Virus record (IMG/VR): IMGVR_UViG_3300020165_000007
Location: 1-64,000 of that record
DNA length: 64,000 nucleotides
Direction: 5' to 3' (one strand)
The notes under the pieces: model-generated
What the model was told of the DNA's origin: nothing
Seen by the model: the letters and a program-made list of their open reading frames with translations, nothing else
Database searches by the model: none
Part shown: positions 5,043 through 61,479 of the stretch, piece after piece
How positions within the stretch are numbered: position 1 is the stretch's first letter
Layout of the letters: every line of letters starts with the position of its first letter
Translations under genes and position numbers: made by a program

Positions 5043-6590
5043 TTAGAATAATATTTCAGTTCTTATTTTAACGTCCCATATCGTACTATTGGTCGTTGTG
5101 GCCCTTAAAATTATATTACTACCACTAATTAAAGTACTAAATACTATATCATCAGTATTAAATGTACCGTCTAAAGTTGAGTAATCCGTAAATACGTTAC
5201 TACTTCCATTTTTACTTACCGCCGATAATATTTTTCCAGTTCTAAATCCGCTTGTTGATTGTTCATTTACATAATATGTGAATTCGTATGAACTTCCTCC
5301 TGTAGTTGGTAGTGAGACTAAATTATGATTACCATTTGTGGTGATAGTCGTATTAACTGATTGTTGATATGAACTACCATATTGTACACTGTTTCCAGAT
5401 ATTAATAGGTTATTAGTTATTCCGTCAAATGTTAAATTACTTTCTACACTTCCAGTACCATCACCATCATAAGTAATAACCCCATTTACTGTATCTCCAT
5501 CTAACTCTAAAAACCCTGATGTTCCACTACTTCCTGAGGAACCTGATGTTCCACTAGAACCTGAACTACCTGATTCTCCTGAAGAACCTGAAGAACCTGA
5601 CGTTCCACTACTTCCTGAGGAACCTGATGTTCCACTAGAACCTGAACTACCTGATTCTCCTGAAGAACCTGAAGAACCTGACGTTCCACTACTTCCTGAT
5701 GAACCTGATGTTCCACTACTACCTGAACTACCTGATTCTCCTGAAGAACCTGAAGAACCTGACGTTCCACTACTTCCTGAGGAACCTGATGTTCCACTAG
5801 AACCTGAACTACCTGATTCTCCTGAAGAACCTGAAGAACCTGACGTTCCACTACTTCCTGATGAACCTGATGTTCCACTACTACCTGAACTACCTGATTC
5901 TCCTGAAGAACCTGAAGAACCTGACGTTCCACTACTTCCTGAGGAACCTGATGTTCCACTAGAACCTGAACTACCTGATTCTCCTGAAGAACCTGAAGAA
6001 CCTGACGTTCCACTAGAACCTGAACTACCTGATTCTCCTGAAGAACCTGAAGAACCTGATGTTCCACTAGAACCTGAACTACCTGATGTTCCTGATGAAC
6101 CTGAAGAACCTGACGTTCCACTACTTCCTGAGGAACCTGATGTTCCACTAGAACCTGAACTACCTGATTCTCCTGAAGAACCTGAAGAACCTGATGTTCC
6201 ACTAGAACCTGAACTACCTGATGTTCCTGAGGAACCTGATGTTCCACTAGAACCTGAACTACCTGATTCTCCTGAAGAACCTGAACTTCCTGACGTTCCA
6301 CTAGAACCTGATGAACCTGATTCTCCACCCGCACCTCCTTCTTTTAATACTAAATCCGAATCTGTAATACCTGAAAAATACCAATAATTTTGTATTCCAT
6401 CTTCAGCCTCTGTTAATTGTAGTCCGTTATATGTTGTTGTACCAGTAACTATACCTACAGTTAACCCTACAAACCTATTCGCACTTACAATACTACTATT
6501 AGCGACTGTAGTGCTACTATACGGACCATATCTTGAATCGAGTGGTAAACCACCTTGTAAATCTATATTACTACTTAAAACTATTCCCAT
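5043..6590 (-). CDS. Collagen-like (GSS/GTS/GES) fibre protein, 515 aa
   Basis: N-domain LPLDSRYGPY...RFVGLTV, ~270 aa Gly-X-X, C-domain homologous to that of 755..4960 (RTG.ILSA...FTD.ST.D). Confidence 0.85.
   Translation of the reverse strand: MGIVLSSNIDLQGGLPLDSRYGPYSSTTVANSSIVSANRFVGLTVGIVTGTTTYNGLQLTEAEDGIQNYWYFSGITDSDLVLKEGGAGGESGSSGSSGTSGSSGSSGESGSSGSSGTSGSSGTSGSSGSSGTSGSSGSSGESGSSGSSGTSGSSGSSGTSGSSGSSGTSGSSGSSGTSGSSGSSGESGSSGSSGTSGSSGSSGESGSSGSSGTSGSSGSSGTSGSSGSSGESGSSGSSGTSGSSGSSGTSGSSGSSGESGSSGSSGTSGSSGSSGTSGSSGSSGESGSSGSSGTSGSSGSSGTSGSSGSSGESGSSGSSGTSGSSGSSGTSGSSGSSGESGSSGSSGTSGSSGSSGTSGFLELDGDTVNGVITYDGDGTGSVESNLTFDGITNNLLISGNSVQYGSSYQQSVNTTITTNGNHNLVSLPTTGGSSYEFTYYVNEQSTSGFRTGKILSAVSKNGSSNVFTDYSTLDGTFNTDDIVFSTLISGSNIILRATTTNSTIWDVKIRTEILF
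5513..6330 (-). repeat. Coding Gly-X-X repeat with GES roughly every 27 aa
   Basis: Near-exact ~81-nt higher-order repeats visible in the DNA. Confidence 0.9.
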
Positions 6591-6594
6591 GATA

Positions 6595-9516
6595 TTATAC
6601 TGTAGATGTTCTTAATTGCATCGACCCAAAACTTTGGGTTTCTGTTTGATAGTTACCTATGTAAATTTTATACCCTACTCCATTCCAATAACCGTCAGGA
6701 CTATCAATATTTGCAGTATCAAAGGTTTGGAATAATCCAGTTGAACCAAAGTTCCCTTTGTTTAAATCAGACACGAAATAACTCTGCTTTGTGTTATATT
6801 CTTCGAAATGTGCAAACCATAAGAACTCAGAAGAAGCATTAAATGTTATTGTTAATGTACTATCTTGGTTATTCGTAATTGATGACTTATTAGCCGTTCC
6901 TCCCGATATTGCGTCTTGAATAGAACTAATTGTTGGTTGGGTGGATGATGTACCATACCAATATGGATATACACCTGTAATCGTTCTGTTGGACGCATCT
7001 AAGTTTGTCCTGGCAGCCTGTGGGGTATTACTATTCGTTCCAAAACTTCTAGTATCGTCATTACCTTTATTGTCTTTTTTAACAACACCTGCGTCGCAAT
7101 CACCTTCCGCGTCATACGTAGTTGAACTACTTGTATTACTTCCTGTTGGTGTGGGTACTGTTAATGTTTCACTAAGTGCCGTACTAGTATATGTGTGGTT
7201 AGGGTTATTATTATTTGTAAATCCAAATTGGTCTGGTATATCAGTAGCGGACCCTTCTGTTGGTGAATTATCTGTTATAACATCGGATGAATTTTTTCTT
7301 AGTCTGATGGACGTGAACTCACCCGCATCATTCTTAGTAGCGACACCTGTAAAGTTTATACTTTCTGTAGTTCCTACCTCAAGAGTTTGACTATTTATAC
7401 CACTAGTAGTAATTGAAGGTGTTGTATATGTTGGTAATACAGTTGGGAATAGTAAGTCGTTAAATAAATCAACCATAGTTTTTCCTGTTAAATCGGCAAC
7501 TGTCGTTCCAGCCTCTATACCTCCTACATCTGCATCCATTTCTAAAGAACTCGTTAAATTAGTATTATATATTGTGTCCGCAGTATAAGGTGTTGATGTG
7601 GTTCCTGAACCTGTTATTCTCACTCCTTCACCACCTACAGTTTCACCACCTATACCTGATGTTCCTGATGAACCTGAACTACCTGATTCTCCTGAAGAAC
7701 CTGAACTTCCTGATGTTCCACTAGAACCTGAACTACCTGATTCTCCACTACTTCCTGATGAACCTGATGTTCCACTACTACCTGAACTACCTGATTCTCC
7801 ACTACTTCCTGATGAACCTGATGTTCCACTACTTCCTGATGAACCTGATTCTCCACTACTTCCTGATGAACCTGACGTTCCACTAGAACCTGAACTACCT
7901 GATTCTCCACTAGAACCTGATGAACCTGACGTTCCACTAGAACCTGAACTACCTGATTCTCCACTACTTCCTGATGAACCTGATGTTCCACTACTTCCTG
8001 ATGAACCTGATTCTCCTGAAGAACCTGAACTTCCTGATGTTCCACTACTACCTGAACTACCTGATTCTCCACTACTTCCTGATGAACCTGATGTTCCACT
8101 ACTACCTGAACTACCTGATTCTCCTGAAGAACCTGAACTTCCTGATGTTCCACTACTACCTGAACTACCTGATTCTCCACTACTTCCTGATGAACCTGAT
8201 GTTCCACTACTACCTGAACTACCTGATTCTCCACTACTTCCTGATGAACCTGATGTTCCACTAGAACCTGAACTACCTGATTCTCCACTAGAACCTGATG
8301 AACCTGACGTTCCACTACTTCCTGATGAACCTGATTCTCCTGAAGAACCTGAACTTCCTGATGTTCCACTAGAACCTGAACTACCTGATTCTCCACTACT
8401 TCCTGATGAACCTGATGTTCCACTACTTCCTGATGAACCTGATTCTCCTGAAGAACCTGAACTTCCTGATGTTCCACTACTTCCTGAACTACCTGATTCT
8501 CCACTACTTCCTGATGAACCTGACGTTCCACTACTTCCTGATGAACCTGATTCTCCTGAAGAACCTGAACTTCCTGATGTTCCACTAGAACCTGAACTAC
8601 CTGATTCTCCACTACTTCCTGATGAACCTGACGTTCCACTACTTCCTGATGAACCTGATTCTCCTGAAGAACCTGAACTTCCTGATGTTCCACTACTACC
8701 TGAACTACCTGATTCTCCACTACTTCCTGATGAACCTGATGTTCCACTACTTCCTGATGTTCCACTACTTCCTGATGAACCTGAACCTCCACCAGTAAAA
8801 CCCGTGACACTTACCGTATCACCTAAATTATTATAAAGTTCTAATGTTGAAGTTCCGCTTAAGTATGTTCCACCTGTTATTGTCGTTAATCCACTTATGG
8901 TAACCGTGTTACCACTATTTGAACTTAAGCTTAAATCTCCGGTACTATTATAATCTACAGTACCTCCCGTAACTTGCCAGTCAGTACCCCAAAATATCCT
9001 CCATCTTGCATTAGTGGCACTAACTCCATTATATCCTTCAACTGTTGAACCTGTCCAAGCGTTTAGTAAGTTTGTACCATCGGTTGTTGCGTTGGTGACA
9101 CTATATAGCCCATCTCCCGAATTATATGAAATCGACCCCGCACTGTCAGCAGCATTAAATAAACTTTCATAATTTGGTATGACATACTGATATGTTTTAT
9201 CAACTTCTCTGACGTAAACCAACATACCAATTTTTCTTCTTCCTGAAGATATCCCATCAGCCCAAAGTTTAACAGTGTCGGGTAAAAAAGATAATCCTCT
9301 TTCGACATACCTTATCGGTATGGTGTTAGCAGATAATTGTATATCTGAACCAGGACTACCGGTTAATATTAAATCTAAATCGCTTATAGTATTAACTTCC
9401 CTATAACCTCCAATATTATTAATACTAAAGTTACTACCTACATATGTTTCAGGTTGTAATGATATCGCGTCTGTATTAACTATTGACGATTTTGGAGTTC
9501 TATATTCGTATGCCAT
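6595..9516 (-). CDS. Collagen-like fibre protein, 973 aa
   Basis: N-domain with RRKIGMLVYV, ~380 aa (GESGSSGSSGTSGSSGSS)n, beta-rich C-terminal region. Confidence 0.85.
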   Translation of the reverse strand: MAYEYRTPKSSIVNTDAISLQPETYVGSNFSINNIGGYREVNTISDLDLILTGSPGSDIQLSANTIPIRYVERGLSFLPDTVKLWADGISSGRRKIGMLVYVREVDKTYQYVIPNYESLFNAADSAGSISYNSGDGLYSVTNATTDGTNLLNAWTGSTVEGYNGVSATNARWRIFWGTDWQVTGGTVDYNSTGDLSLSSNSGNTVTISGLTTITGGTYLSGTSTLELYNNLGDTVSVTGFTGGGSGSSGSSGTSGSSGTSGSSGSSGESGSSGSSGTSGSSGSSGESGSSGSSGTSGSSGSSGESGSSGSSGTSGSSGSSGESGSSGSSGTSGSSGSSGESGSSGSSGTSGSSGSSGESGSSGSSGTSGSSGSSGESGSSGSSGTSGSSGSSGESGSSGSSGTSGSSGSSGESGSSGSSGTSGSSGSSGESGSSGSSGTSGSSGSSGESGSSGSSGTSGSSGSSGESGSSGSSGTSGSSGSSGESGSSGSSGTSGSSGSSGESGSSGSSGTSGSSGSSGESGSSGSSGTSGSSGSSGESGSSGSSGTSGSSGSSGESGSSGSSGTSGSSGSSGESGSSGSSGTSGSSGSSGESGSSGSSGTSGSSGSSGESGSSGSSGTSGIGGETVGGEGVRITGSGTTSTPYTADTIYNTNLTSSLEMDADVGGIEAGTTVADLTGKTMVDLFNDLLFPTVLPTYTTPSITTSGINSQTLEVGTTESINFTGVATKNDAGEFTSIRLRKNSSDVITDNSPTEGSATDIPDQFGFTNNNNPNHTYTSTALSETLTVPTPTGSNTSSSTTYDAEGDCDAGVVKKDNKGNDDTRSFGTNSNTPQAARTNLDASNRTITGVYPYWYGTSSTQPTISSIQDAISGGTANKSSITNNQDSTLTITFNASSEFLWFAHFEEYNTKQSYFVSDLNKGNFGSTGLFQTFDTANIDSPDGYWNGVGYKIYIGNYQTETQSFGSMQLRTSTV
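7655..8790 (-). repeat. Coding 54-nt repeat (GESGSSGSSGTSGSSGSS)n
   Basis: Strict alternation of GES and GTS every 9 aa. Confidence 0.9.
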
Positions 9517-11791: not shown

Positions 11792-14692
11792 TTATTTAAT
11801 TTCACCTACAGATAATAAATCATAAGCCACAACATTTACCGAACCTTCGACATTTAATTCGCAACTTATTTGTCTAGAGGTACCAACGACCGTAAGAGTA
11901 CAACTATATACGGGTTGAGTACTCGATGGAGTCGGTGTTAAAGTAACTGTTGGGGTTGATGTTGGGGTCGCACCTGGAGTAGCGGTTAAACTAGGTGTAA
12001 CCGTTATAGTTGGAGTTACTGTAGGAGTTACTGTAGAGGTGGGTGTTGGTGACACGGGACCTATTCTTCCCGCACAATTAACATTTATTTCTATTTCAAC
12101 CTTTAGTTCAATAAATGCACCATTTAATGGGTCTATATCACCCTCACAATCACCTTTTACCGTAAATATATTATTTAGTAAATCCGTGGTATATGTAATT
12201 CCACTAAATTGTGATAACATTCCTTGAACTATAGTTTCCCATTCATTATCTGAAGGAACATCATTTAAGGTATATCCAGTATAAAATGCGTTTTCTATAG
12301 TTTGACCTACACCATAACTACCCCCTGATATCGTGAGAACTCCAGTAAACACCGCGCTTTCTAAGTAACATCCATTTCCTGGTTGATTTAAATCTAAGAA
12401 AGCCTCGTTTAACATTTCATAAAACCCTCTCTTACCTTCTGAACTGGTTACAAACTCTTGCTCACATAAAGTATTAATTACGTAGTCATCAACGTTTTCA
12501 TCATTACAGGTTATTGAAACACTCTTAATTATTGAACAACCTTCACTATCTACAATTGTTGCCGTATATGTACCTCCTGAAAGACCTGTTAAATATAAAC
12601 CTGTCTGCGAAGTAGGTACATTAGCTGACCACGTAATTGTGAATGGTGCGATACCATCTGTTATAGTTAAACTTGCAGTTCCATCATTACCTGAAACACA
12701 TGGTGTACTATATAGTACTGCCTGTACTCCTCCTGTCCCTTCTAATATAGTAAAGTACTGTGTTACTGCACATCCTTCATTATCCGTAACAACAACTTGA
12801 TACGAACCCTGAGGTAAGTTATTTACTAATTCAACATTACTTAAAGACCCAATATTGTTAGAAACTACAGTTCCATCACTAATTTGTGATACCACATAAC
12901 TAAGTGGATATTTAATCTCAGTAGTACCCGATGAAACCTCTATATTTACCTCTCCATTTGACTGTCCGCAAGTTGTTGCGGTTAATGATGTCGCAACAGT
13001 AAACTTATTCTCATTTAATATTGTGGCAGTGTCAGTATATTTACACCCATTAATTAATTCTATTCCGATTTGATATGTCCCAGAAGCAAGATTCTCAAAG
13101 GTATATGATTGATTTGTTGTTGTTACCGTTTGGATATTACCTCCACTACCCGTTAAAGTATACGTTAATGGACCTTGATTGGCATTTACATTTATTTGAA
13201 TTGACCCATCTTCACCACAATCAGAATTTTCAGTTATAATACTAACCAAACTAAATCCCGCGGTTGAGGTTAATTGAACGGGTTGGTTAATTGAACATTG
13301 TCCAGCATCTTCAATTAAGATATTATAAGCCCCTCCACATAAACTATTTAACGTAAATGTTGTTGAACCGTTCTGTATTTGTCCCGTACTACCTGAGAAA
13401 TAATAAGGTAAGGTACCTCCAGTAACTGTAACAGTGATTGTACCATCACAATCAAAACAAGTTGGTTGTGTTCCTACTATATTTGAAACCCCCAATAATG
13501 GTAACTGCGGTACTGTAAACCGTTTCGTTATTACACACCCATTCGCATCTGTCACAGTAACCGATGCATCCCCCGCGGGTAAATTAGATACAGATGGGGT
13601 AGTATCTAATGTTGACCAAAAATATGTAAAGGGAGGAGTACCACCTGTAAAGTTAGTAACCTCACCATACCCAGTATTTGCAACTAAACAAGGACTCGCA
13701 CCTGTTATTAAAACTTCATAATCAAAACTAGCAACTGAGTTAATTGTAACGGTATCCGTTTGTCCTGTTTGTCCGTTACCGTCTACTACAATTGCGTAGT
13801 ATTCACCAGGTAAAATATCACTATCTATAGTAATTATATTTTCATTATAGAATTCGTCACTAAACTCATTTCCATTATAATAAAGATATACATGATACGG
13901 ATACGACAATGAATTACCTGAAATATTAATAATACCTGTAGTTAAGTTACATGTGATATCAACACCAGATATATCAACCTCAAAACAAGGGTTAACTACC
14001 ACCTGTGTTGTTAATTCTCTAGCGGTAGGTAAAGTACTATCACTAATATTAAAAACGTAAGTAGTTGCAGATAAACCACTAAAATTAAATGGACCGTTAC
14101 CTTGCGTTGTAGGTATAGTCCCTGGTGAGGAGTTAACTATTAAGTAAGGGTTAGTTCCCCCCTCTACATCAAGATATATTGACCCGTCATCACCACAGTC
14201 AGGGGTTCCTGAAAAAGTCACACTTAACGGTCCTTCATCACAATTGGGTGTACATTCAAAACTTGTAACGTCAATACCTGAATAAGGTAATGTAGTGTTT
14301 ACGCAAAATACAACTCCTAAACTTGAACCTCTTTGTGTGACTCCACAACAATCCATAAATTCATAGTTACCATTTGTTGTACCTGAAACACAATCAGGAA
14401 CAACAGGTGGAGTCGGGGTAGGTGTCGGCGTTATAGTAGGTGTCGGTGTTGGGCTTGTGGGGATGTTAGCCGATGCATAACATATAGCACCTGAATCCAT
14501 ATCAATAACTTGATATTCAAAACAAGTCCCAGTAATAAACGACTCAACGTCAAATTGAAATGGGAAATCACTATATGTTAGTGAAGACGCAACGTCTGTA
14601 TATGTTGTTACATCACAATCTTTTACACTAACTGTATAATTACCCGGATTTGGGTCTGAAACTCCTAATGATATGTTTACTATTTGACTCAT
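11792..14692 (-). CDS. SprB-repeat-like adhesin / virion appendage protein
   Basis: Repeated GGTPPFTYFWS...LPAG...VTVTDANGC-type units typical of Bacteroidota SprB repeats; start trimmed to ATG 14692 (MSQIVN). Confidence 0.75.
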   Translation of the reverse strand: MSQIVNISLGVSDPNPGNYTVSVKDCDVTTYTDVASSLTYSDFPFQFDVESFITGTCFEYQVIDMDSGAICYASANIPTSPTPTPTITPTPTPTPPVVPDCVSGTTNGNYEFMDCCGVTQRGSSLGVVFCVNTTLPYSGIDVTSFECTPNCDEGPLSVTFSGTPDCGDDGSIYLDVEGGTNPYLIVNSSPGTIPTTQGNGPFNFSGLSATTYVFNISDSTLPTARELTTQVVVNPCFEVDISGVDITCNLTTGIINISGNSLSYPYHVYLYYNGNEFSDEFYNENIITIDSDILPGEYYAIVVDGNGQTGQTDTVTINSVASFDYEVLITGASPCLVANTGYGEVTNFTGGTPPFTYFWSTLDTTPSVSNLPAGDASVTVTDANGCVITKRFTVPQLPLLGVSNIVGTQPTCFDCDGTITVTVTGGTLPYYFSGSTGQIQNGSTTFTLNSLCGGAYNILIEDAGQCSINQPVQLTSTAGFSLVSIITENSDCGEDGSIQINVNANQGPLTYTLTGSGGNIQTVTTTNQSYTFENLASGTYQIGIELINGCKYTDTATILNENKFTVATSLTATTCGQSNGEVNIEVSSGTTEIKYPLSYVVSQISDGTVVSNNIGSLSNVELVNNLPQGSYQVVVTDNEGCAVTQYFTILEGTGGVQAVLYSTPCVSGNDGTASLTITDGIAPFTITWSANVPTSQTGLYLTGLSGGTYTATIVDSEGCSIIKSVSITCNDENVDDYVINTLCEQEFVTSSEGKRGFYEMLNEAFLDLNQPGNGCYLESAVFTGVLTISGGSYGVGQTIENAFYTGYTLNDVPSDNEWETIVQGMLSQFSGITYTTDLLNNIFTVKGDCEGDIDPLNGAFIELKVEIEINVNCAGRIGPVSPTPTSTVTPTVTPTITVTPSLTATPGATPTSTPTVTLTPTPSSTQPVYSCTLTVVGTSRQISCELNVEGSVNVVAYDLLSVGEIK

Positions 14693-14696
14693 GATA

Positions 14697-39874: not shown

Positions 39875-39887
39875 ACATTTGTAATCT

Positions 39888-40812: not shown

Positions 40813-40825
40813 TTACTGAGAATAA

Positions 40826-40851: not shown

Positions 40852-40875
40852 AATAAAAATATTTACACGGTTTAA

Positions 40876-41496: not shown

Positions 41497-41509
41497 AATA
41501 TTTTTTATT

Positions 41510-41734: not shown

Positions 41735-41773
41735 TACTCTTTTTTATATAAATATATTGATTATTTGGAATAT

Positions 41774-53452: not shown

Positions 53453-53468
53453 ACGAATCTATTTTTAT

Positions 53469-53475
53469 ATAAATA
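53469..53475 (-). promoter_or_regulatory. TATTTAT element, representative copy of a putative late promoter
   Basis: The same heptamer precedes 13 minus-strand operon-leading starts (listed under findings). Confidence 0.6.
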
Positions 53476-53491
53476 GATTAGATATTCATTT

Positions 53492-55585
53492 TTAAGCGGA
53501 ATATGTATTATTAGAATCGGTAAGTATTGTCATTAGTTTACTTGTAAAAGTAGGGTTATTAACAATTTCATTTGCCAATTGTTCAGATGATATGTTTTGT
53601 GGGAGATTTCTTCCGTCAACCGATAAATCTATTTTACCACCCACATTTAGATTAATTTCACCATTAACATTATTGCCGGTGTCGTCCATATTTTCTAATA
53701 AACTAGTTCCACCAATTATTATATCATCTTTCAAGAATCTTTGAACGGGCATTCCAGGTCTAGAAATAAAATCCTGATTCACAGGTGAGGTTGTGTCTGC
53801 AGATGTGTCAGGTGTTCCGGCAGCCGCATCGTCTATATTTTCACCCAAAAACATAGCAGCATTTGTAGCTAAATCACCAACTATATCACTAAAATTACCA
53901 AATAGTGTTTTGGCTGTAGTAAGTTGAGATAAAACACTATCAGGTATTAAACCTTCCATTTTAGTTTTAAATTCTGTAAGTCCACTCTCAGTTGATTGAT
54001 ATGCTGCGGTTATAAAATTCTCAACACTAAGACCAGAATCTTTCATTAAGTTAGTTTCGGGTAACTTATCATTCATATCTATAAGTGACGTCTCAATCGC
54101 GGTTCCAAATGTAGATGAAATGTTAAATGCGGCATTTTTAAAATGTTTTCTTGCTTCTTCATCTTGAAATCCTTCAGCGATATTCTGAGTTAACGCGTTT
54201 CCATAAATTTTTAAATTTTCTTCATTAATAGAGGCGTCTAAACCTTCCCTAACAACTTCAGCGTAAGCATCTAAACCACCTAAAGCATCAATCACTCCAT
54301 CAGTTTTTACACCCACTAAAGTAGTTGCCGACTTAGCGCTTTGATTGGCCCCCGCAATTTCTTGAAGTGCTGTAAGTTGTTCCATAGCGATTTCTCTATC
54401 GCTCATTTCATTCTTACTTTGTTGCTCTTTTAACGCCTTAAAATCATCTTGATTTAAATCTGCTGCCGATTTAATTGCGGGAATCATCTTTTTAGTCGCC
54501 TCATCAAAAGTAGGTATGGACACTTTTAAGTCACCTCCCTCAATTGTACTCATATTTGCAACTAGTTCTTTAAACTCTTCAGGAACTGTGGCCGTTCCCA
54601 ACATATCTAATTTTTTTGTTCTTTCAGCGGCTTTAAATGCGGTTTGAGTCATATCTTGGTAGGACATTCCAGCTAAATTAGCCGCCTCTCTTAGTCGATA
54701 CATTTCCGTAACAGGTATATCAAACTCACCAGTTTCCTCATTAAATACTGCAGCACTTTCAGCCATACCAACAACCGCATCCATCAATCCTTCAGTGTCT
54801 GTCTGAGCTAAATGTAGTAATTTAAATGGGTCACCTAAATCTCCTACAGCACCTCCCAACATCTGAAATCCGGCTGCAGTTTCTATTGCCGTTTCAGGGT
54901 CAAGTAACTTTTCAGAAAGTGAAAACGTTTGGGATACGTCCATCCTTAACGCTTGTGCCTTCGCCACCATACGAGAAAATCCTTCTACACCATCTTTAAA
55001 ATTGTAACTAGATAACATTTTTATGTTACTACCTATATCTTTCATAAACTTACCAACATTAATACCATAATCCCTGGCTTGTTTTTGCATGTCACTAATT
55101 TTTGAGATTGCATCTGATGTACCTACACCAATATTTCTAAATCCTTCAACAATTGGGACTATCTCAGCAGATGTAAGTCCAGCGTTACGTGCTAAGAGTT
55201 GCATATTTTCAACTTGCTCAGAAGATAGTAAAGTATTAACCCCCATTACATCATTTATTTGTTGTATTAAAATTAAGTTCTCTTCTAATCCAACTCCAAA
55301 TTTAGTAGTTTCAAATGTGGCTTCAGCCATAGTGGTCATTAACGCATTACCAATCGCACTAGTTTGTCCCATGGACTTAGTAGTTAGATTAAATGTTAGT
55401 TCTTGTAATTTAGCAGTATCTTCTATTACTGATGTCGGCATAATCATCCTCGCTAAACTTGAGGTTATATTTAATACCGTTGTATCTAAAAGTCCGGCGG
55501 CTTTATTTAAGCCGTCCATACCTTTACTAATATCGTTTATCGCGTTTTTAGCGTTATCTGCCGCTTCTCCAATTTTGTTAGCCAT
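53492..55585 (-). CDS. Tape measure protein, 697 aa
   Basis: Ala/Met/Leu-rich helical protein in the canonical position after the tube and chaperones. Confidence 0.7.
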   Translation of the reverse strand: MANKIGEAADNAKNAINDISKGMDGLNKAAGLLDTTVLNITSSLARMIMPTSVIEDTAKLQELTFNLTTKSMGQTSAIGNALMTTMAEATFETTKFGVGLEENLILIQQINDVMGVNTLLSSEQVENMQLLARNAGLTSAEIVPIVEGFRNIGVGTSDAISKISDMQKQARDYGINVGKFMKDIGSNIKMLSSYNFKDGVEGFSRMVAKAQALRMDVSQTFSLSEKLLDPETAIETAAGFQMLGGAVGDLGDPFKLLHLAQTDTEGLMDAVVGMAESAAVFNEETGEFDIPVTEMYRLREAANLAGMSYQDMTQTAFKAAERTKKLDMLGTATVPEEFKELVANMSTIEGGDLKVSIPTFDEATKKMIPAIKSAADLNQDDFKALKEQQSKNEMSDREIAMEQLTALQEIAGANQSAKSATTLVGVKTDGVIDALGGLDAYAEVVREGLDASINEENLKIYGNALTQNIAEGFQDEEARKHFKNAAFNISSTFGTAIETSLIDMNDKLPETNLMKDSGLSVENFITAAYQSTESGLTEFKTKMEGLIPDSVLSQLTTAKTLFGNFSDIVGDLATNAAMFLGENIDDAAAGTPDTSADTTSPVNQDFISRPGMPVQRFLKDDIIIGGTSLLENMDDTGNNVNGEINLNVGGKIDLSVDGRNLPQNISSEQLANEIVNNPTFTSKLMTILTDSNNTYSA

Positions 55586-55609
55586 TATTAAGTATTATAT
55601 TATAAATAC

Positions 55610-55802
55610 TTATCTTTTAGATTTTACTTTTTCGGACTGTTGTTTTCGTTTATCAAATTCCTCAACTAACTTTCCTATAAAGTATTTTCTTTCGTATGTA
55701 GGCATATTAATTAAGTCGTTATAAGAAAAATTTGCATGACGAGTTAAGTAATATATTTCATCAAGCACAGATACCCTAGATTCAGAAGAAAGGCCGAAAA
55801 AA
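55610..55802 (-). CDS. Tail chaperone C-terminal extension (probably made by frameshift)
   Basis: EIYYL....FSYNDLINMPTYERKYFI resembles tail-chaperone second ORFs; no ATG near its start; overlaps the upstream gene in the +1 frame. Confidence 0.65.
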
Positions 55803-56537
55803 CTCCACCCCAAAGGTGACTCTAACTGTCAACTCTTCTCCTGACGGGGCGTTTAAACTCCTTTCTAAGTCTAATTTTGGTTCCGAATTAGAAAGGCTAT
55901 TTCTTATGAATTTAGAATCCATAATTGGTAATTTTATGACGAAGCTTGTTATAAACTCTCTATCGGTGTTGTTGTCTACACTTACTATTTGTTTTGATAA
56001 CCTATTGGTTACTATGGGGGCCGTAACATTGTTTGGGTACTTCTCTAACATATCGTTAAGTTCCTGTACTTCTCCTACCGTAAGTAGTTTACATTTTACC
56101 ATATTTCCTGACTTAGGTAGTTTAAATGTAAATGTCCCGTCTTCTTCGGGTTCTTTTTCAAGTTTTTTGAAATTTAGCTCATCGAGACGAACCGTATGTT
56201 CAAATGAATTATTAGTTTTAGGGTCTCTTAATGTAAAATTATAATCGGGACCAAACGCTGTGTTTCTCAAAAATATTAAAATAGCCTCTAAATCACCTTC
56301 TAATAAGTCATTAACCTTAACGTCTGGTTCATATATCTTATTTTTAACTAAATCATTTATAATGTTTGGATTTTTACCGTTTCCGGCAGATACCAAAATA
56401 TTTTCATCCTGAGCTGTCAGATATCCAATTTTAAGACTCTTTTTTTTGTTTTTATAAAACTTACCCTGCGAGGGAAGTGTTACCACGTCATGTGGTAAAT
56501 TAAAGTCTTGTTGTCCATATTGTTTCGCTTCGTCCAT
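55782..56537 (-). CDS. Tail/baseplate assembly chaperone (T4 gp26-like), 251 aa
   Basis: VTLPSQGKFY, YLTAQDENIL, GDLEAILIFLR..AFG.DY, ends EFFRP; lies between tube and tape measure. Confidence 0.75.
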   Translation of the reverse strand: MDEAKQYGQQDFNLPHDVVTLPSQGKFYKNKKKSLKIGYLTAQDENILVSAGNGKNPNIINDLVKNKIYEPDVKVNDLLEGDLEAILIFLRNTAFGPDYNFTLRDPKTNNSFEHTVRLDELNFKKLEKEPEEDGTFTFKLPKSGNMVKCKLLTVGEVQELNDMLEKYPNNVTAPIVTNRLSKQIVSVDNNTDREFITSFVIKLPIMDSKFIRNSLSNSEPKLDLERSLNAPSGEELTVRVTFGVEFFRPFF

Positions 56538-56554
56538 ATTTTTGTGTAAAAAAA

Positions 56555-56580
56555 AACCATAGGGAATAAACCCTATGGTT
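56555..56580 (-). terminator. Intrinsic terminator after the tail tube gene
   Basis: AACCATAGGG-AATAAA-CCCTATGGTT followed by a long T-run on the minus strand. Confidence 0.75.
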
Positions 56581-56614
56581 AATTATATAAACTATTATTT
56601 TTTTTTCAATAGTA

Positions 56615-57103
56615 TTAGTAAACCAAAATACATCTATCAGGACGTAATGTCGCTGTAATTGTTGCCAATGCGTCATCACTATATCCCAAACTATCAAAAT
56701 TAACATCAGTTAAGAAAGTACCCTGTAGAATCCATTTTTCAACCGCAACTCCTGTAGGGTCTAACATTTCAAGGTCTAGGTCTTTCTTATAACCAGCTGC
56801 GTATCCCATACGACCTGTAACGGACTCTGAGGTTAATCTTACCCATTCCATTAAGGCTTGTGCTGCCGATGGTCCTATGGGGTCTCTAAACGTCACGTTT
56901 ATCGTATTCCAAGTAAATCTACCAGCAACATAAGTAGATGTGTTTAAGAAAGGAATCTCAGTTGCGTTAATTTGGACGTTAGGTCTAGATGTGGACTCAA
57001 CATACCAAGAGTTAATACCCAATGATGAAGGAAAACTTAGAACAAATCTATTTTTTCTTTTCGGTTCATACGGTACGGGCATTTTCATTAATAAATCAGC
57101 CAT
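56615..57103 (-). CDS. Tail tube protein (gp19-like)
   Basis: EPKRKNRF, YVAGRFTWNTINVTFRD, YKKD..L..LDP.G..VEKW.L.G.F. Confidence 0.88.
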   Translation of the reverse strand: MADLLMKMPVPYEPKRKNRFVLSFPSSLGINSWYVESTSRPNVQINATEIPFLNTSTYVAGRFTWNTINVTFRDPIGPSAAQALMEWVRLTSESVTGRMGYAAGYKKDLDLEMLDPTGVAVEKWILQGTFLTDVNFDSLGYSDDALATITATLRPDRCILVY

Positions 57104-58293: not shown

Positions 58294-61200
58294 TCAGATA
58301 TCCTCAAATGATGCACCTGTCGGAGTAATTAAGAATTCTATATCGATGAATTCTAACGCTCTTGTTGGTTTTAGATATATTTTACCTACTAAGGTGTTAT
58401 TATCTAAATCTTCAGGAGTGTTCTGAACGACAACTCTAAAGTCAATCAAACCTCTATCTCTTCTGATAGAATCTAAGATTGGGTTTACTGAGTCCAAGAA
58501 TTCTTGTCTTACTTGGTCATCATTCTGTTCGAACAATAGTCTTACCGCTACTGCTGAAATCAACTTACGAGCTTGTAATAACAATCTTCTAACATTGATT
58601 CTGTCGAGTGCTGACTGTTTAACTTGAGTAGTTTTATTACCCCATATTACTGTACCAACATCTGAGAAAGTTGCGATTGGGTTGATTCTACCTTTATATA
58701 GAATGTCTCTATCATCTTGAGTTAACTTCTTACGAGCTTTAATACCATTTACTAAACCTCTTGTATAACCCGCGGATGCGAACCATGGGAATGATATATT
58801 ATCTGTTAACGCTAAGTTTCTAACAACTTCAGCGGTAGGTGGTAAGTAAATCTGTGTGTTATTAACAGTATCTCTTGTAAGAATCCATGGGTAATAAGTT
58901 GCAGTATAGTTAGAGTCAATTCCAGTATCTTCTAAGTTTTCGGTCGCTTCTTGTGGGTAAATAAAGTCAGTTGTAAAATTAGACGTAGTATTAACAAACA
59001 TGTTATAGTCAGGTGTGGTACAGATATAAATTGAGTCCGCTCTATCCGTTTCAATCATATCAATCGCCTCCTCTACTAAGTTTGAGTTATTAACATAATC
59101 TATACCTGAAGTAGTAAACACATTAATATTTACAGCTTCAGGGTTAACAAAAGTCCACTGACCCCATAAGTAAGCATAATAGTCAGTATTACCCCAATCT
59201 TGTTTATCTGGACCAACAATTGTTTTAAACGCCCCCCATCCTGTTGCACTTGGGAATCTAACTGATGGTGCCGCTCCACGTAGATATCCATTATTACCTA
59301 ATATAAATGTATCTCCATTAGTACGAGACTCTCGATAGATATCCCATCCATCAAATCCTCCAGTAGGAACTAATGTAAATTTACGAGAATTTAATCTGTA
59401 ATATGGACTATCTTCGTTAGGTTCACTATCGAATGATGCGTCACCAACCTCAAACGCAGTTTCACCCGAAGTTACATACTGAGATGGGATTAGAACTACA
59501 GTCGCTCCTGAGTCCATATGATATCCTTTTGTTAATTCCGCCCACGGAGATGACTCAGTAGCGGTAGATAAGTTAGTCGGATTTTGTTTACCCTTATAAG
59601 AGGTAAAGTCGACATCAATACCGACAGTATTCGATACACCTAAGAAAACTCTTCTTGGGTTATCGCCCGCACTTCTTGTTAAGTTATCTCCATTAGAAGA
59701 CCCAAAAGGAGGGTTAAATAACACCTCACCTGGAGTATCATACTTAGTCTTATAAAGTAGGTGTGGTGATTTATAACTACTGTACTGTCGAGTTTGGTAA
59801 CCTTTAAAACCACAAGGTAATGAATCGGACGGAGCCTCTTCATTTACTTCTAACATAATATATCTTGACTTTAACTCAAAATCTCCATTAGCTGTACCGA
59901 TTTTTTTAGCCACATAACTATTAAGATTTATATCCATGGTACAGTTTGTGAATTTTTCTAATACGATTGGGTTAGAATCGGTATCATAAAAACTTCTAAC
60001 AACAACGTCAAAGGTTAGGTTATTAAATGATATATTCATTATAGAGACTTTAATCTCTCTGTTCGCCGAGTTACCGTCTGAGATTGAAATAACTTTAAAT
60101 AAGTCGGAAACTTCATTACCTCTTAATTCTGAAACTAAATATGGTGTAGAGGGGGTTTGATACCTATCTAAGTACCATCCGATACCTGTATTATCAACAT
60201 CTTCTCTCGCACTTTGTAATCCTAATAAAGTAGTATTTAATCCTCTAATCTTACCTTCTTTGTATCCTGTATTTAATAAGTTATAATAAATTTCCTCGAC
60301 AAATAATGGAATTTCATTACTTGGTTTAGAAAAATTACTTTGACCTAACACTTTACTTATAAAGTTAGGGTCACTTAAAGAAAGTGATGTGTTGAACGTA
60401 AATATCTCTGAGTCGTTTGTTATACCTGAAATTTGGAAATTAGAGAATGGATTATTAGTTATTCCTGAATATACTCCTGTAGAGTTAATTGTTACATTGG
60501 TTAATCCTGAAACTTCGTAATCGGGATTATTAGAATTACTAGTTGTTGATATCCCTCTTGACCTTAGTGTACTAACAACCATATTATGGTAATCAGTGAT
60601 TGGTGTTCCTGTATATGTGGTAGTATATACAACACCCACACCTGTATAATTGTTACCTACAGTATTTGTTAATCCTGTGATAGACAATCCAAAACCGACA
60701 CCACTGTATTCACCTGTACCACTATTATATGGGAATAAAGCGTAATACCATGAATCATTTTCAGACGCTTCAAAATCTGCGGTATCAATGGTAAGACCAT
60801 CCACACCCAATACGTTAGTTGTACCTGTCCATGTTCCCGAAGCTCCAGTTATTGCGTCATAAGTTTCGCCACTAACAGTACCAAACATAAATGATGTGGC
60901 TCCTGAACTGACGGGGTTAACAATACTTTGATAAACCGCAGATTCAAAGTTGCCCTGTAATGTTGATATATTACCTGAAAATGTTGTATAAGGTAATCCG
61001 AACACACTTTCTATAGATGAAGGTAAGTTACTAAAATCAGTAATTTCAGTTGAACTACTATTACCTGATACACCACTAAAAGTTATTGTATAAGCAATTC
61101 CGTCAGAATCTTTAGGAGTAATTAATGATTTATTTACGTTACCCACCGTTGATATTGACCATGATGGTCCAGCATCGTATCCTGATAAACCTAAGACACG

Positions 61201-61479
61201 AGTCACAAAAAGTTGATTGGATTGTTGTAAGTAGGCTTTGGCAATATATGCCGCCTCATATTTTGGAATCTGTGTGTTTACAAATTTAGTTGGTTCTGTC
61301 CCCCCAAAAAATGAGGTAAACTCATCAAAGTTTGTAATGAAGATAGGTTCGAACGCCGGACCTGATAAGGTTTCACCGACGACACCTAAAGTCGTTACAC
61401 CGACACTTTGAGCCACAAAACTTAAATCTCTTTCTGATGTATATACACCTGGAGATACGAATACTTTTTCTGCTGCCAT
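58294..61479 (-). CDS. Contractile tail sheath protein (gp18-like), 1061 aa
   Basis: SPGVYTSERD, GPAFEP, YYPW, PWFASAGYTRG, RINPI, WGNKT, RINVRRLL, FEQND, EFIDI. Confidence 0.95.
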   Translation of the reverse strand: MAAEKVFVSPGVYTSERDLSFVAQSVGVTTLGVVGETLSGPAFEPIFITNFDEFTSFFGGTEPTKFVNTQIPKYEAAYIAKAYLQQSNQLFVTRVLGLSGYDAGPSWSISTVGNVNKSLITPKDSDGIAYTITFSGVSGNSSSTEITDFSNLPSSIESVFGLPYTTFSGNISTLQGNFESAVYQSIVNPVSSGATSFMFGTVSGETYDAITGASGTWTGTTNVLGVDGLTIDTADFEASENDSWYYALFPYNSGTGEYSGVGFGLSITGLTNTVGNNYTGVGVVYTTTYTGTPITDYHNMVVSTLRSRGISTTSNSNNPDYEVSGLTNVTINSTGVYSGITNNPFSNFQISGITNDSEIFTFNTSLSLSDPNFISKVLGQSNFSKPSNEIPLFVEEIYYNLLNTGYKEGKIRGLNTTLLGLQSAREDVDNTGIGWYLDRYQTPSTPYLVSELRGNEVSDLFKVISISDGNSANREIKVSIMNISFNNLTFDVVVRSFYDTDSNPIVLEKFTNCTMDINLNSYVAKKIGTANGDFELKSRYIMLEVNEEAPSDSLPCGFKGYQTRQYSSYKSPHLLYKTKYDTPGEVLFNPPFGSSNGDNLTRSAGDNPRRVFLGVSNTVGIDVDFTSYKGKQNPTNLSTATESSPWAELTKGYHMDSGATVVLIPSQYVTSGETAFEVGDASFDSEPNEDSPYYRLNSRKFTLVPTGGFDGWDIYRESRTNGDTFILGNNGYLRGAAPSVRFPSATGWGAFKTIVGPDKQDWGNTDYYAYLWGQWTFVNPEAVNINVFTTSGIDYVNNSNLVEEAIDMIETDRADSIYICTTPDYNMFVNTTSNFTTDFIYPQEATENLEDTGIDSNYTATYYPWILTRDTVNNTQIYLPPTAEVVRNLALTDNISFPWFASAGYTRGLVNGIKARKKLTQDDRDILYKGRINPIATFSDVGTVIWGNKTTQVKQSALDRINVRRLLLQARKLISAVAVRLLFEQNDDQVRQEFLDSVNPILDSIRRDRGLIDFRVVVQNTPEDLDNNTLVGKIYLKPTRALEFIDIEFLITPTGASFEDI

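What the first reader, a model, noticed from the sequence alone, without database searches (positions are those of the whole stretch)
5043..61479. [S/T]-G-x-T motif enriched in surface-exposed virion proteins: candidate glycosylation sequon
Seen (approximate hand counts outside the repeats): about 9-10 copies in the sheath (SGAT, SGET, TGTT, TGLT, SGLT, SGIT x2, SGAT, SGET), mostly in the variable insertion near aa 130-360; ~8 in 6595..9516; ~9 in the SprB-like protein; 4-5 each in 17360..20311, 21221..22291 and 25368..30422. I saw almost none in the replication enzymes (only the RecA Walker A TGKT) and few in the tape measure. Composition predicts roughly 1-2 per 1000 aa. Inference: convergent enrichment in unrelated outer proteins suggests a modification sequon. 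With the Ser-rich and mucin-like stalks, this suggests a glycan-coated virion. It differs from the Bacteroidota D-[ST]-[AILVMT] sequon. No glycosyltransferase is in this window.
Basis: partly seen in the sequence, partly recalled or inferred. Interest (0 to 1): 0.8.

Follow-up and report, generated by a model that had tools for sequence, protein, structure and literature searches.

The report
Ser/Thr-Gly-x-Thr motif on phage tail
A short motif, [Ser/Thr]-Gly-x-Thr, really is 3-8 times too frequent on the outward-facing tail proteins of this uncultured marine jumbo phage, and just outside the window the phage carries bacterial-type enzymes that put heptose sugars on proteins; so a sugar-coated virion is plausible, but it is not proven that this motif is the attachment site.

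Summary
The counts are right and the enrichment is real. In six non-homologous outer virion proteins [ST]-G-x-T occurs 40 times against 10 expected. In inner tail and replication proteins it occurs 7 times against 5.4. Composition, local composition, codon bias and paralogy do not explain this. The pattern is position-specific: only S/T, only G, and T more than S. A hydrophobic residue usually precedes it, and it is kept in orthologs down to 30-50% identity. T4 and LR756508 lack the enrichment.

In 99%-identical contigs a glycosylation island starts about 7 kb beyond window position 1, next to five collagen-like fibre genes. It encodes two TibC/AAH-type protein O-heptosyltransferases, with catalytic Asp and iron-finger cysteines conserved. 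It also encodes ADP-heptose synthesis genes and two polypeptide-GlcNAc-transferase-like genes.

The link between motif and enzyme is circumstantial and mixed. Known acceptors are Ser-Gly loops, but AIDA-I is not enriched in the motif. Microcystis phage Mel-JY01 has the enzyme and a different [ST]-G-S motif. Huge phage LR756501 has both the enzyme and motif-rich neighbours.

Verdict: an O-heptosylation acceptor is about as likely (0.42) as a purely structural strand-exit motif (0.40).

The parts
58294..61479 (-). Tail sheath, 1061 aa, with 9 [ST]G.T sites, all in the inserted outer domains
   Evidence: PHROG 23 tail sheath E 9e-55 and Pfam Phage_sheath_1C. 9 vs 2.3 expected. In 117 homologs: mean 6.1 vs 1.7.
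59383..61149 (-). Sheath insertion, aa 111-699 (outer domains). It carries all 9 sites; the conserved core (aa 1-110 and 700-1061) carries none
   Evidence: Insertion 9 vs 1.4; core 0 vs 0.5. In 117 homologs: insertion 6.1 vs 1.3, core 0.0 vs 0.48. AlphaFold2 pLDDT is mostly 70-93 over aa 103-620 and lower (43-79) over aa 620-700.
60412..60522 (-). Three [ST]G[LI]TN units spaced 13-14 residues apart (aa 324, 338, 351) in the sheath insertion
   Evidence: Read from the sequence. Sites 324 and 351 are kept as the motif in 94 and 100 of 117 homologs.
6595..9516 (-). Collagen-like tail fibre protein, 973 aa. 9 sites, all outside the (GSS)n repeat; six lie in aa 155-241 (window 8794-9054)
   Evidence: Pfam Collagen E 1e-53. 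PHROG tail fibre families. 9 vs 2.7 after masking the repeats, p=0.0005.
11792..14710 (-). SprB-repeat outer protein, 972 aa, 9 sites. At least the two TGGT sites (aa 355, 430) are followed by a proline and aromatic residues (PPFTYFW, LPYYF), which I take to be part of the SprB repeat; aa 430 lies inside the best-matching Pfam stretch (414-439)
   Evidence: Pfam SprB E 3e-11. 9 vs 3.3, p=0.004. Orthologs: 8-17 vs 3-7.
17360..20311 (-). Unknown distal-tail protein, 983 aa, 4 sites
   Evidence: 4 vs 1.1, p=0.02. Orthologs at 50-81% identity have 3-6 vs about 1.
21221..22291 (-). Unknown 356-aa distal-tail protein with a PKD-like middle domain. 4 sites here; 7 in the family consensus
   Evidence: 4 vs 0.5, p=0.001. 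Consensus of 76 homologs contains SGNT, SGMT, SGGT, TGLT, TGVT, SGYT and SGLT. S40-G41-G42-T43, G221/T223 and S286-G287-T289 are invariant or nearly so.
25368..30422 (-). Unknown 1684-aa baseplate or fibre protein, 5 sites (three within aa 841-875)
   Evidence: 5 vs 1.4, p=0.01. Orthologs vary from 1 to 6.
755..4960 (-). Collagen-like fibre protein, 1401 aa, (GSS/GTS)n. 0 copies of [ST]G.T but 314 S-G-x-S triplet junctions. It is the window gene nearest to the glycosylation island
   Evidence: Pfam Collagen E 7e-130. Triplet census: GSS 210, GTS 103. Island neighbourhood.
5043..6590 (-). Collagen-like fibre protein, 515 aa, not enriched (2 vs 0.9 outside the repeats)
30496..57103 (-). Comparison set without enrichment: baseplate wedge, ribonucleotide reductase, DnaB, exonuclease, UvsX, SSB, two giant internal tail proteins, hub and tube
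   Evidence: Annotations. 7 vs 5.4 pooled (this pooled set also includes 57225-58076 and 61768-63802).

Best explanation
The motif, more fully hydrophobic-[Ser/Thr]-Gly-x-Thr, marks the exit of a beta-strand into a short loop on the outer domains of the sheath, distal baseplate and fibre proteins.

The phage is an uncultured marine T4-like jumbo phage of about 300 kb. Next to its fibre genes it carries a protein-glycosylation island. The island contains a GT4 glycosyltransferase fused to a TibC/AAH-type O-heptosyltransferase, a second short heptosyltransferase, ADP-heptose kinase, adenylyltransferase and 6-epimerase genes, and further sugar enzymes.

The most likely mechanism is as follows. 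In the infected cytoplasm these enzymes transfer heptose from ADP-heptose to the Ser/Thr that precedes Gly in such strand-loop-strand elements, and the GT4 domain or other island transferases may then extend the sugar. The hundreds of S-G junctions in the (G-S-S)n collagen-like stalks are probably modified as well. The result would be a glycan-coated tail surface.

Shown:
- The enrichment, its specificity and its conservation.
- The presence, family membership and conserved catalytic residues of the enzymes.
- Their position next to the fibre genes.

Inferred:
- That virion proteins are the substrates.
- That the motif's Ser/Thr is the acceptor.
- What the glycan does (shielding, stability or adhesion).
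For: - Enrichment is 40 vs 10 in six non-homologous outer proteins, and 7 vs 5.4 in inner and replication proteins. With a hydrophobic residue at -1 it is 34 vs 5.4.
- Only hydroxyl residues are enriched at position 1. N is 1.7x and D 0.57x, unlike generic hairpin turns. Only G is enriched at position 2.
- In the sheath, all sites lie in the outer insertion and none in the core, in any of 117 homologs.
- The enrichment is kept in orthologs at 30-80% identity, e.g. up to 7 vs 0.5 for the 21221 family.
- It is absent from T4 (18 vs 13.7; sheath 0) and from the heptosyltransferase-negative relative LR756508.
- The island sits on the same 309-kb contig as the window genes, at 99% identity.
- The 766-aa protein scores 206.5 bits against TIGR04414, cutoff 200.
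- It aligns to TibC (PDB 4RAP) at E 8e-35, with Asp110, Thr226, Lys230, Trp305 and Cys339/342/358/370 conserved (residue roles from PMC4358343).
- The split HldE and HldD-like genes are present.
- In bacteria these enzymes modify Ser followed by Gly in strand-loop-strand repeats, and their genes sit next to the substrate gene.
- The unrelated 735-kb phage LR756501 has the same GT4-heptosyltransferase fusion and two nearby ORFs with 8 vs 0.7 and 6 vs 1.4.
- The structural protein next to Mel-JY01's enzyme gene has [ST]GS 13 vs 2.5.
Against: - There are no mass-spectrometry data.
- AIDA-I, a proven substrate, is not enriched in [ST]G.T (4 vs 2.8). Its loops are S-G-G followed by I/Q/V/A.
- TibC modified Ser but not Thr, whereas half of the sites here begin with Thr.
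- Mel-JY01 has the orthologous enzyme but no [ST]G.T enrichment genome-wide.
- LR756504 has the enzyme and shows no enrichment within 20 kb.
- 80 IMG/VR heptosyltransferase loci show 1.05x in their flanks.
- Flavobacterium phage immuto lacks the enzyme yet has 22 vs 12.7, with similar [ST]G[LI]T sites in its tail spikes.
- Some sites look like part of the SprB repeat (TGGT followed by P and aromatic residues).
- Residue -1 is hydrophobic and several sites are invariant, as expected for a fold element.
- In the models the sites sit in mixed contexts: strand ends, loops, and one helix N-cap.
- The [ST]GS and LR756501 observations were found after the fact.
Confidence: 0.42

Rival explanations
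1. Purely structural motif. Hydrophobic-[ST]-G-x-T is a strand-exit or turn element (Ser/Thr capping the turn, Gly giving backbone freedom, beta-branched Thr starting the next strand). It belongs to the beta-rich PKD-, SprB- and fibre-type domains this lineage uses for its outer proteins. It is not modified. The glycosylation island acts on other targets, such as the collagen-like (GSS)n stalks or host envelope molecules.
For: - Residue -1 is hydrophobic (2.35x; charged residues 0.13x) and -2 is often Thr, a beta-strand signature.
- Several sites are invariant across more than 70 homologs.
- TGGT sites followed by a proline and aromatic residues lie in or near the SprB-repeat matches.
- In the sheath family the enrichment comes from retention at about 15 columns, not from extra gains.
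- Immuto, which lacks the enzyme, has similar sites in its tail spikes.
- Mel-JY01 has the enzyme but not the motif.
- AIDA-I is not enriched.
- There is no concerted loss of sites across proteins in the subclade where the 356-aa protein lost four sites.
Against: - Generic turns prefer Asn/Asp before Gly, but here only Ser/Thr are enriched.
- Six non-homologous proteins share the preference, while the equivalent proteins of T4, Mel-JY01 and LR756508 do not.
- Sites occupy mixed secondary-structure contexts in the models.
- One subclade replaced Ser by Glu/Gln/Asn, or deleted sites, in a protein that is otherwise 75% identical. So the hydroxyl is not needed for the fold.
Confidence: 0.4
2. The motif serves another hydroxyl-dependent function: another modification (for example GlcNAc from the PF11397-like enzymes, or phosphorylation), or direct binding to a ligand or partner on the host surface.
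For: - The island has at least four further transferase-like genes, including two PF11397 proteins (E 3e-75 and 5e-48).
- The hydroxyl-specific preference at positions 1 and 4.
Against: There is no specific evidence for any of these. As far as I recall, the characterised PF11397 enzymes act on hydroxyproline, not on Ser/Thr.
Confidence: 0.1
3. Chance or composition artefact of a pattern chosen after seeing the data.
For: - The motif was defined post hoc.
- As a single-residue pattern, SG.T has p=6e-6 among about 48,000 patterns.
- The collagen-like proteins as whole proteins show no enrichment.
Against: - The enrichment survives local block shuffles.
- It is specific at every position.
- It recurs in orthologs down to 30-50% identity and in 117 sheath homologs.
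- It recurs in a further protein outside the window (6 vs 1.1).
Confidence: 0.03

Closest known systems
Bacterial autotransporter heptosyltransferases (TibC, AAH) acting on TibA and AIDA-I
   Same: - Same enzyme family: TIGR04414 above its cutoff, with the catalytic Asp, sugar-binding Thr/Lys/Trp and the four iron-finger Cys conserved.
- ADP-heptose is the likely donor, and the synthesis genes are co-located.
- The enzyme gene sits beside the genes of repetitive beta-rich surface proteins.
- Acceptors are Ser followed by Gly in strand-loop-strand elements.
   Different: - The genes are encoded by a phage, and no autotransporter is present.
- One copy is fused to an N-terminal GT4 domain, and the other lacks the N-terminal beta-barrel.
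- Arg286 is not conserved, and Pro300 is replaced by Gly or Ser.
- The candidate motif has Thr at +3 and a hydrophobic residue at -1, whereas AIDA-I loops are [SN]-S-G-G-x and are not enriched in [ST]G.T.
- Thr is as common as Ser at position 1.
Virion glycosylation in mycobacteriophages (Freeman et al. 2023, cited as reference 80 in PMC12582341)
   Same: Phage-encoded glycosyltransferases are thought to coat exposed virion proteins with glycans.
   Different: The host phylum, the enzyme families and the donor sugar all differ. Here the targets would be sheath, baseplate and fibres, and no experiment exists for this phage.
Glycan-coated capsids and fibrils of giant viruses, with virus-encoded sugar pathways (review PMC9614988)
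   Same: The virus carries its own nucleotide-sugar synthesis and transferase genes. From my own knowledge, collagen-like and fibril proteins are among the substrates.
   Different: Those are eukaryotic viruses with different enzymes and sequons, and heptose is not involved.
Bacteroidota general O-glycosylation sequon D-[ST]-[AILVMT]
   Same: A short linear Ser/Thr sequon on surface proteins.
   Different: It is a periplasmic system. Tested here, D[ST][AILVMT] is not enriched (31 vs 38.6 in outer proteins), and neither is N-x-[ST] (123 vs 131).
BclA-type glycosylated collagen-like filaments of Bacillus spores (own knowledge, not tested here)
   Same: Collagen-like G-X-Y repeats rich in hydroxyl residues that carry O-glycans on an outer filament.
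   Different: The repeats here are GSS/GTS/GES, not GPT. The enzymes differ, and there is no evidence of modification.

Membership tests
BAHT (TibC/AAH autotransporter O-heptosyltransferase; TIGR04414) | Profile score above the curated cutoff | tested here: met
   The 766-aa protein (L044:7704-10004) scores 206.5 bits against a cutoff of 200, E 5.7e-61, over aa 416-765. The 295-aa paralog scores 192.5 bits, just below the cutoff.
BAHT (TibC/AAH autotransporter O-heptosyltransferase; TIGR04414) | Catalytic base Asp110 and sugar-binding Thr226, Lys230, Trp305 and Arg286 (TibC numbering) | tested here: inconclusive
   Asp110, Thr226, Lys230 and Trp305 are conserved in both proteins. Arg286 falls in a gap in the fusion protein and is Ser in the short paralog (residue roles).
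BAHT (TibC/AAH autotransporter O-heptosyltransferase; TIGR04414) | Iron-finger with four Cys (339, 342, 358, 370) | tested here: met
   All four Cys are aligned and conserved in both phage proteins and in the Mel-JY01 ortholog.
BAHT (TibC/AAH autotransporter O-heptosyltransferase; TIGR04414) | N-terminal beta-barrel, required for TibC activity | tested here: inconclusive
   The fusion protein aligns from TibC residue 20, so the barrel region is present. The short paralog starts at TibC residue 99 and lacks it.
BAHT (TibC/AAH autotransporter O-heptosyltransferase; TIGR04414) | Transfers heptose from ADP-heptose to Ser of a protein; forms a dodecameric ring | not testable with these tools
   Only context is available: heptose-7-P kinase (E 1e-37), heptose-1-P adenylyltransferase (E 1e-28) and ADP-heptose 6-epimerase-like (E 2e-52) genes lie in the same island.
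BAHT (TibC/AAH autotransporter O-heptosyltransferase; TIGR04414) | Substrate is an adjacent autotransporter beta-helix | tested here: not met
   No autotransporter is present. The neighbours are five collagen-like fibre genes and a MAM-domain protein.
O-glycosylation sequon (the claim for [ST]-G-x-T) | Enriched over composition, and only in exposed proteins | tested here: met
   40 vs 10 in six outer proteins and 7 vs 5.4 in inner and replication proteins. In the sheath the sites are only in the outer insertion.
O-glycosylation sequon (the claim for [ST]-G-x-T) | A cognate protein glycosyltransferase is encoded by the genome | tested here: met
   The island lies 7-30 kb beyond window position 1 on 99%-identical contigs. 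It is not inside the window.
O-glycosylation sequon (the claim for [ST]-G-x-T) | Matches known acceptor sites of that enzyme family | tested here: inconclusive
   Ser-Gly is shared (TibA Ser313 in NSGGA). Thr at +3 is not shared, and the AIDA-I passenger is not enriched (4 vs 2.8).
O-glycosylation sequon (the claim for [ST]-G-x-T) | Motif density tracks the presence of the enzyme across genomes | tested here: inconclusive
   Enzyme present: window clade yes, LR756501 yes, Mel-JY01 no (it has [ST]GS instead), LR756504 no. Enzyme absent: T4 no, LR756508 no or weak, immuto mild.
O-glycosylation sequon (the claim for [ST]-G-x-T) | Site hydroxyls are solvent-exposed, and glycan is detected on them | not testable with these tools
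   The models return only secondary structure. Sites lie at strand ends and loops, with one at a helix cap. No proteomic data are available.
Collagen-like triple-helix fibre proteins | Long uninterrupted G-X-Y repeats matching Pfam Collagen | tested here: met
   E values are 7e-130, 6e-40 and 1e-53 for the three window genes, and 9e-56 and 3e-46 for two more beyond the window. The triplets are GSS, GTS and GES.

The most novel reading that the evidence does not exclude
A widespread clade of marine jumbo phages, and other large aquatic phages (at least 586 viral contigs carry the enzyme), has taken up the bacterial autotransporter heptosyltransferase. These phages would use it, with their own ADP-heptose supply, to O-heptosylate sheath, baseplate and fibre proteins at hydrophobic-[ST]-G-x-T strand-exit loops and along (G-S-S)n collagen-like stalks. 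This would be the first phage glycosylation system with a definable sequon and the first non-autotransporter substrates for this enzyme family.
Probability: 0.35. Interest if true: 0.8.

Novelty: new variant of a known kind. Interest (0 to 1): 0.62.

Why it matters
Glycosylation of phage virions has been shown experimentally in very few systems, mainly mycobacteriophages. It affects immune recognition, stability and possibly host range.

If this motif is an acceptor, it would give a sequence-readable mark of glycosylated surfaces on an abundant group of uncultured marine phages. It would extend the TibC/AAH enzyme family from pathogen adhesins to virus particles. It would also offer a compact enzyme-plus-tag pair for putting heptose on chosen proteins.

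Even if the motif proves purely structural, the heptosyltransferase and ADP-heptose island beside collagen-like fibre genes is unreported. I found it in no paper of the searched library. Only 4 of 50,697 GenBank phage records carry a homolog, and in the one annotated record of the four (the other three carry no annotation) it is annotated as a methyltransferase. The island can be tested directly by co-expression in E. coli.

Tried and rejected
- DNA-level or codon explanation: codons at the sites are diverse. Rejected.
- Shared paralogous domains: all-against-all BLAST of window proteins gave only one weak pair, 11792 with 17360. Rejected as the cause.
- A general property of T4-like virion proteins: T4 has 18 vs 13.7 with 0 in its sheath, and Mel-JY01's structural region has 4 vs 6.7. 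Rejected.
- Local composition: 20-100-aa block shuffles keep the enrichment.
- Other sequons: D[ST][AILVMT] and N-x-[ST] are not enriched.
- Excess independent gains of the motif in the sheath family: the number of columns with the motif (21) is like that of control motifs (11-32). Only retention is higher.
- Concerted loss of sites across proteins in the subclade where the 356-aa protein lost sites: not seen.
- Foldseek of the sheath model against the PDB: no significant match for the insertion.
- Scan of bacterial genomes for relatives of the SprB-like protein, wanted as a fold-class control: nothing found.
- Flanks of 80 viral heptosyltransferase loci: no general enrichment. 12 of 75 have a collagen-like ORF within 10 kb.
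- Homology of the motif-rich 581-aa protein beyond the window to the Mel-JY01 capsid or portal protein: none.
- Walking the whole 300-kb genome was not possible within the look-up cap. The head module was not reached, so capsid proteins could not be tested.


Full report
WHAT THE WINDOW IS. All long ORFs lie on the minus strand. They encode the following:
- a tail sheath (58294-61479), tube and baseplate hub;
- two giant internal tail proteins;
- gp25- and gp6-like wedge proteins;
- ribonucleotide reductase, DnaB, exonuclease, UvsX and SSB;
- a block of unknown distal-tail proteins (17360-30422);
- a SprB-repeat protein (11792-14710) and two Thr/Pro-rich proteins;
- three collagen-like fibre proteins (755-9516).

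The nearest cultured relatives are very distant. They are Microcystis phage Mel-JY01, Flavobacterium phage immuto and the uncultured 484-kb phage LR756508, at about 26-31% identity for sheath and wedge. The same phage occurs in many metagenomes on contigs of up to about 309 kb, and its sheath has more than 5,000 homologs.

THE OBSERVATION. Whole-protein shuffles and shuffles within 20-100-residue blocks give the same answer:
- sheath: 9 vs 2.3;
- 11792-14710: 9 vs 3.3;
- 17360-20311: 4 vs 1.1;
- 21221-22291: 4 vs 0.5;
- 25368-30422: 5 vs 1.4.

For 6595-9516 the whole-protein test shows nothing (9 vs 8). The (G-S-S)n repeat inflates the expectation while contributing no copies. With the repeats masked it is 9 vs 2.7, p=0.0005.

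Pooled, the six proteins have 40 vs 10.0, all twelve outer proteins 49 vs 17.7, and the inner tail plus replication proteins 7 vs 5.4.

Scanning one position at a time shows a true pattern rather than a composition effect:
- At position 1 only Ser (3.6x) and Thr (2.6x) are enriched. Asn is 1.7x and Asp 0.57x.
- At position 2 only Gly is enriched.
- At position 4 Thr (3.0x) exceeds Ser (1.9x).
- The reversed pattern is depleted (0.69x).

Around the core, residue -1 is hydrophobic (2.35x; charged residues 0.13x), -2 is often Thr and +4 often Asn. With the hydrophobic residue included, the count is 34 vs 5.4. Codons are diverse, and the proteins are not paralogs.

The motif was chosen after seeing the data, so the raw p-value (2e-8) overstates the case. 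Replication in relatives removes chance as an explanation.

CONSERVATION.
- In 117 sheath homologs (65-100% identity) the mean is 6.1 vs 1.7.
- Sites 324, 351 and 657 are kept in 80-97% of them. Other sites turn over, with Gly replaced by Ala, Ser or Thr.
- All sites lie in the inserted outer domains and none in the conserved core, in any homolog.
- Orthologs of the other proteins at 30-80% identity keep or exceed the enrichment.
- The consensus of 76 homologs of the 356-aa protein contains seven copies, several of them invariant.
- Compared with control motifs, the sheath family does not gain the motif at more positions. It retains it for longer.
- One subclade of the 356-aa protein lost four sites by deletion or by Ser-to-Glu/Gln/Asn change, at 75% overall identity. 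So the hydroxyl is not indispensable for the fold. There is no concerted loss in the neighbouring proteins.

CONTROLS IN OTHER PHAGES.
- T4 virion proteins: 18 vs 13.7, with 0 in the sheath.
- Mel-JY01, whole genome: 33 vs 25.9, with 0 in the sheath and no enriched ORF.
- LR756508: 3 vs 3.0 around the baseplate and 4 vs 2.2 around the sheath.
- Flavobacterium phage immuto: 22 vs 12.7, mostly [ST]G[LI]T in a tail spike and a 211-aa protein.

So this is not a general property of T4-like virions, though a milder version exists elsewhere.

THE KEY NEW FACT LIES OUTSIDE THE WINDOW. A 309-kb contig carries the window's sheath-side gene and its first collagen-like gene, and it is 99% identical over the aligned DNA. 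Beyond window position 1 this contig continues with two more collagen-like fibre genes and a MAM-domain protein. A glycosylation island then starts about 7 kb out. It contains:
- an ADP-glyceromanno-heptose 6-epimerase-like gene (E 2e-52);
- a 295-aa and a 766-aa protein matching TIGR04414, 'autotransporter strand-loop-strand O-heptosyltransferase' (192.5 and 206.5 bits, cutoff 200), the larger one fused to an N-terminal GT4 domain;
- a split HldE, i.e. heptose-7-phosphate kinase (E 1e-37) and heptose-1-phosphate adenylyltransferase (E 1e-28);
- a PseC/DegT aminotransferase, acetyltransferases and a cupin;
- two PF11397 GlcNAc-transferase-family proteins (E 3e-75 and 5e-48);
- a methyltransferase and an HtrL/GT2 protein.

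Both heptosyltransferase homologs align to TibC (PDB 4RAP; E 8e-35 and 1e-31). They conserve the catalytic Asp110, Thr226, Lys230, Trp305 and all four iron-finger cysteines. Arg286 is not conserved, and the short paralog lacks the N-terminal barrel (residue roles from PMC4358343).

These enzymes are known only as cytoplasmic protein O-glycosyltransferases of repetitive beta-helical adhesins, and their genes usually sit next to the substrate gene. Only 4 of 50,697 GenBank phage records have a homolog. The Mel-JY01 copy is annotated as a methyltransferase. At least 586 IMG/VR contigs carry one. I found no paper in the searched library describing such an enzyme in a phage.

DOES THE MOTIF FIT THE ENZYME? 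Partly. TibC heptosylates Ser313 (in NSGGA) and Ser322 of TibA, on Ser and not Thr. Acceptor choice is thought to depend on a strand-loop-strand element rather than a linear sequon. The phage motif is also a Ser/Thr-Gly at a strand exit.

Evidence against the fit:
- The AIDA-I passenger is not enriched in [ST]G.T (4 vs 2.8). Its loops are [SN]-S-G-G-x.
- Half of the phage sites start with Thr.
- Mel-JY01 carries an ortholog of the whole fusion (99% coverage, 42% identity) without any [ST]G.T enrichment.
- LR756504 has the enzyme and shows no enrichment nearby.
- The flanks of 80 viral heptosyltransferase loci are at 1.05x.

Evidence for the fit:
- The unrelated 735-kb phage LR756501 has the same GT4-heptosyltransferase fusion and two nearby large ORFs with 8 vs 0.7 and 6 vs 1.4.
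- The structural protein next to the Mel-JY01 enzyme gene is rich in a sister pattern, hydrophobic-[ST]-G-S-hydrophobic ([ST]GS 13 vs 2.5).
- 12 of 75 viral heptosyltransferase loci have a collagen-like gene within 10 kb, six of them of the (G-[ST]-S)n type.

A common denominator, Ser/Thr-Gly at a strand exit with lineage-specific following residues, is attractive but was found post hoc.

STRUCTURE. AlphaFold2 models the sheath insertion well (pLDDT mostly 70-93 for aa 103-620, lower towards aa 700) but not the core. It models the 356-aa protein only in part. In these models the sites lie in the following places:
- at strand ends, or in the two-residue loop of a hairpin (aa 25-26 of the 356-aa protein);
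- at loop-to-strand transitions (sheath 192, 218, 324);
- inside a long strand (268);
- at a helix N-cap (203);
- in a short helix (338).

The tools return no coordinates, so exposure of individual hydroxyls could not be computed. Foldseek found no solved analogue of the insertion.

WEIGHING. For a modification site:
- hydroxyl-only specificity;
- restriction to outer domains of six unrelated proteins;
- absence from the equivalent proteins of T4 and LR756508;
- a rare family of protein O-glycosyltransferases with its donor pathway beside the fibre genes;
- the LR756501 parallel.

For a purely structural element:
- the buried-type residue at -1;
- invariance of several sites;
- TGGT sites that look like part of the SprB repeat;
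- the Mel-JY01, AIDA-I and immuto results.

I put the acceptor reading at 0.42, the purely structural reading at 0.40, another hydroxyl-dependent function at 0.10 and chance at 0.03. Separately, I estimate roughly 0.6-0.7 that the virion is glycosylated somewhere. The (GSS/GTS/GES)n stalks are at least as good a target: the three window genes alone contain 534 triplets, each an S-G-x-S junction.

NOVELTY. Phage virion glycosylation and the TibC/AAH family are each known. The combination is not. It consists of a phage-encoded heptosyltransferase with its own ADP-heptose genes, next to collagen-like fibres, plus a conserved candidate acceptor motif on sheath and baseplate. I rate it a new variant of a known kind. 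It is testable by simple co-expression and mass spectrometry.

Noticed in passing
Outside the window: L044:1-12220 and L132:1-19107 (ENA ERZ10646685 contig_29657), about 7-30 kb beyond window position 1: A glycosylation island of at least 20 kb. It holds two TibC/AAH-type O-heptosyltransferases (one fused to GT4), HldD-like and split HldE genes, a PseC/DegT aminotransferase, PseH-like and hexapeptide acetyltransferases, a cupin, two PF11397 GlcNAc-transferase-like genes, a methyltransferase and an HtrL/GT2 protein. GmhA and GmhB equivalents were not identified.
   Followed up: yes
window 755-9516, plus L044:13240-19509: Five tandem collagen-like fibre genes. Their triplets are almost only GSS, GTS and GES. 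Thr is always at the X position and almost never at Y (one GET triplet), which is why the repeats contain no [ST]G.T but hundreds of S-G-x-S.
   Followed up: partly
window 9528-11742: The Thr/Pro-rich gene 9528-11711 (-) has a long antisense ORF, 10012-11742 (+). Gene callers on sister contigs called the antisense strand (L039:2577-4751). A PHROG 15511 match (E 1e-25) supports the minus-strand product. The local reversal of GC skew fits ACN/CCN codon richness.
   Followed up: partly
L139:679-2424 (about 18 kb beyond the window end): A 581-aa unknown protein with a Pro/Ser/Ile/Thr-rich linker is also motif-rich (6 vs 1.1). It has no similarity to the Mel-JY01 capsid or portal proteins, and a protease-like gene follows it.
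   Followed up: partly
L003:5611-7170 (just beyond the window end): A 519-aa protein with Fe/Mn superoxide dismutase N- and C-terminal domains lies between a gp13-like neck gene and an SNF2 helicase. This is unusual for a phage.
   Followed up: no
window 41774-53452: Two giant proteins (2204 and 1585 aa, the latter with a weak OmpA-domain hit) lie between the hub/tube genes and the replication block, separated by a small gp25-like gene at 48378-48695. They have no family match, and which of them is the tape measure is unclear.
   Followed up: no
window 32886-35888: Ribonucleotide reductase large- and small-subunit genes sit directly between baseplate wedge genes and the replication genes.
   Followed up: no
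L136 (LR756501.1 560168-601010) and L046 (Mel-JY01 3065-8430): The GT4-heptosyltransferase fusion recurs in unrelated huge phages. In Mel-JY01 it carries an extra domain and is annotated 'methyltransferase FkbM'. The adjacent 508-aa 'structural protein' is rich in hydrophobic-[ST]-G-S-hydrophobic.
   Followed up: partly
window 58294-61479 (model m8d17942f9d7a): AlphaFold2, given 62 close homologs, modelled the novel 600-aa sheath insertion confidently. It left the conserved sheath core (aa 1-102 and 708-1061) below pLDDT 50.
   Followed up: no
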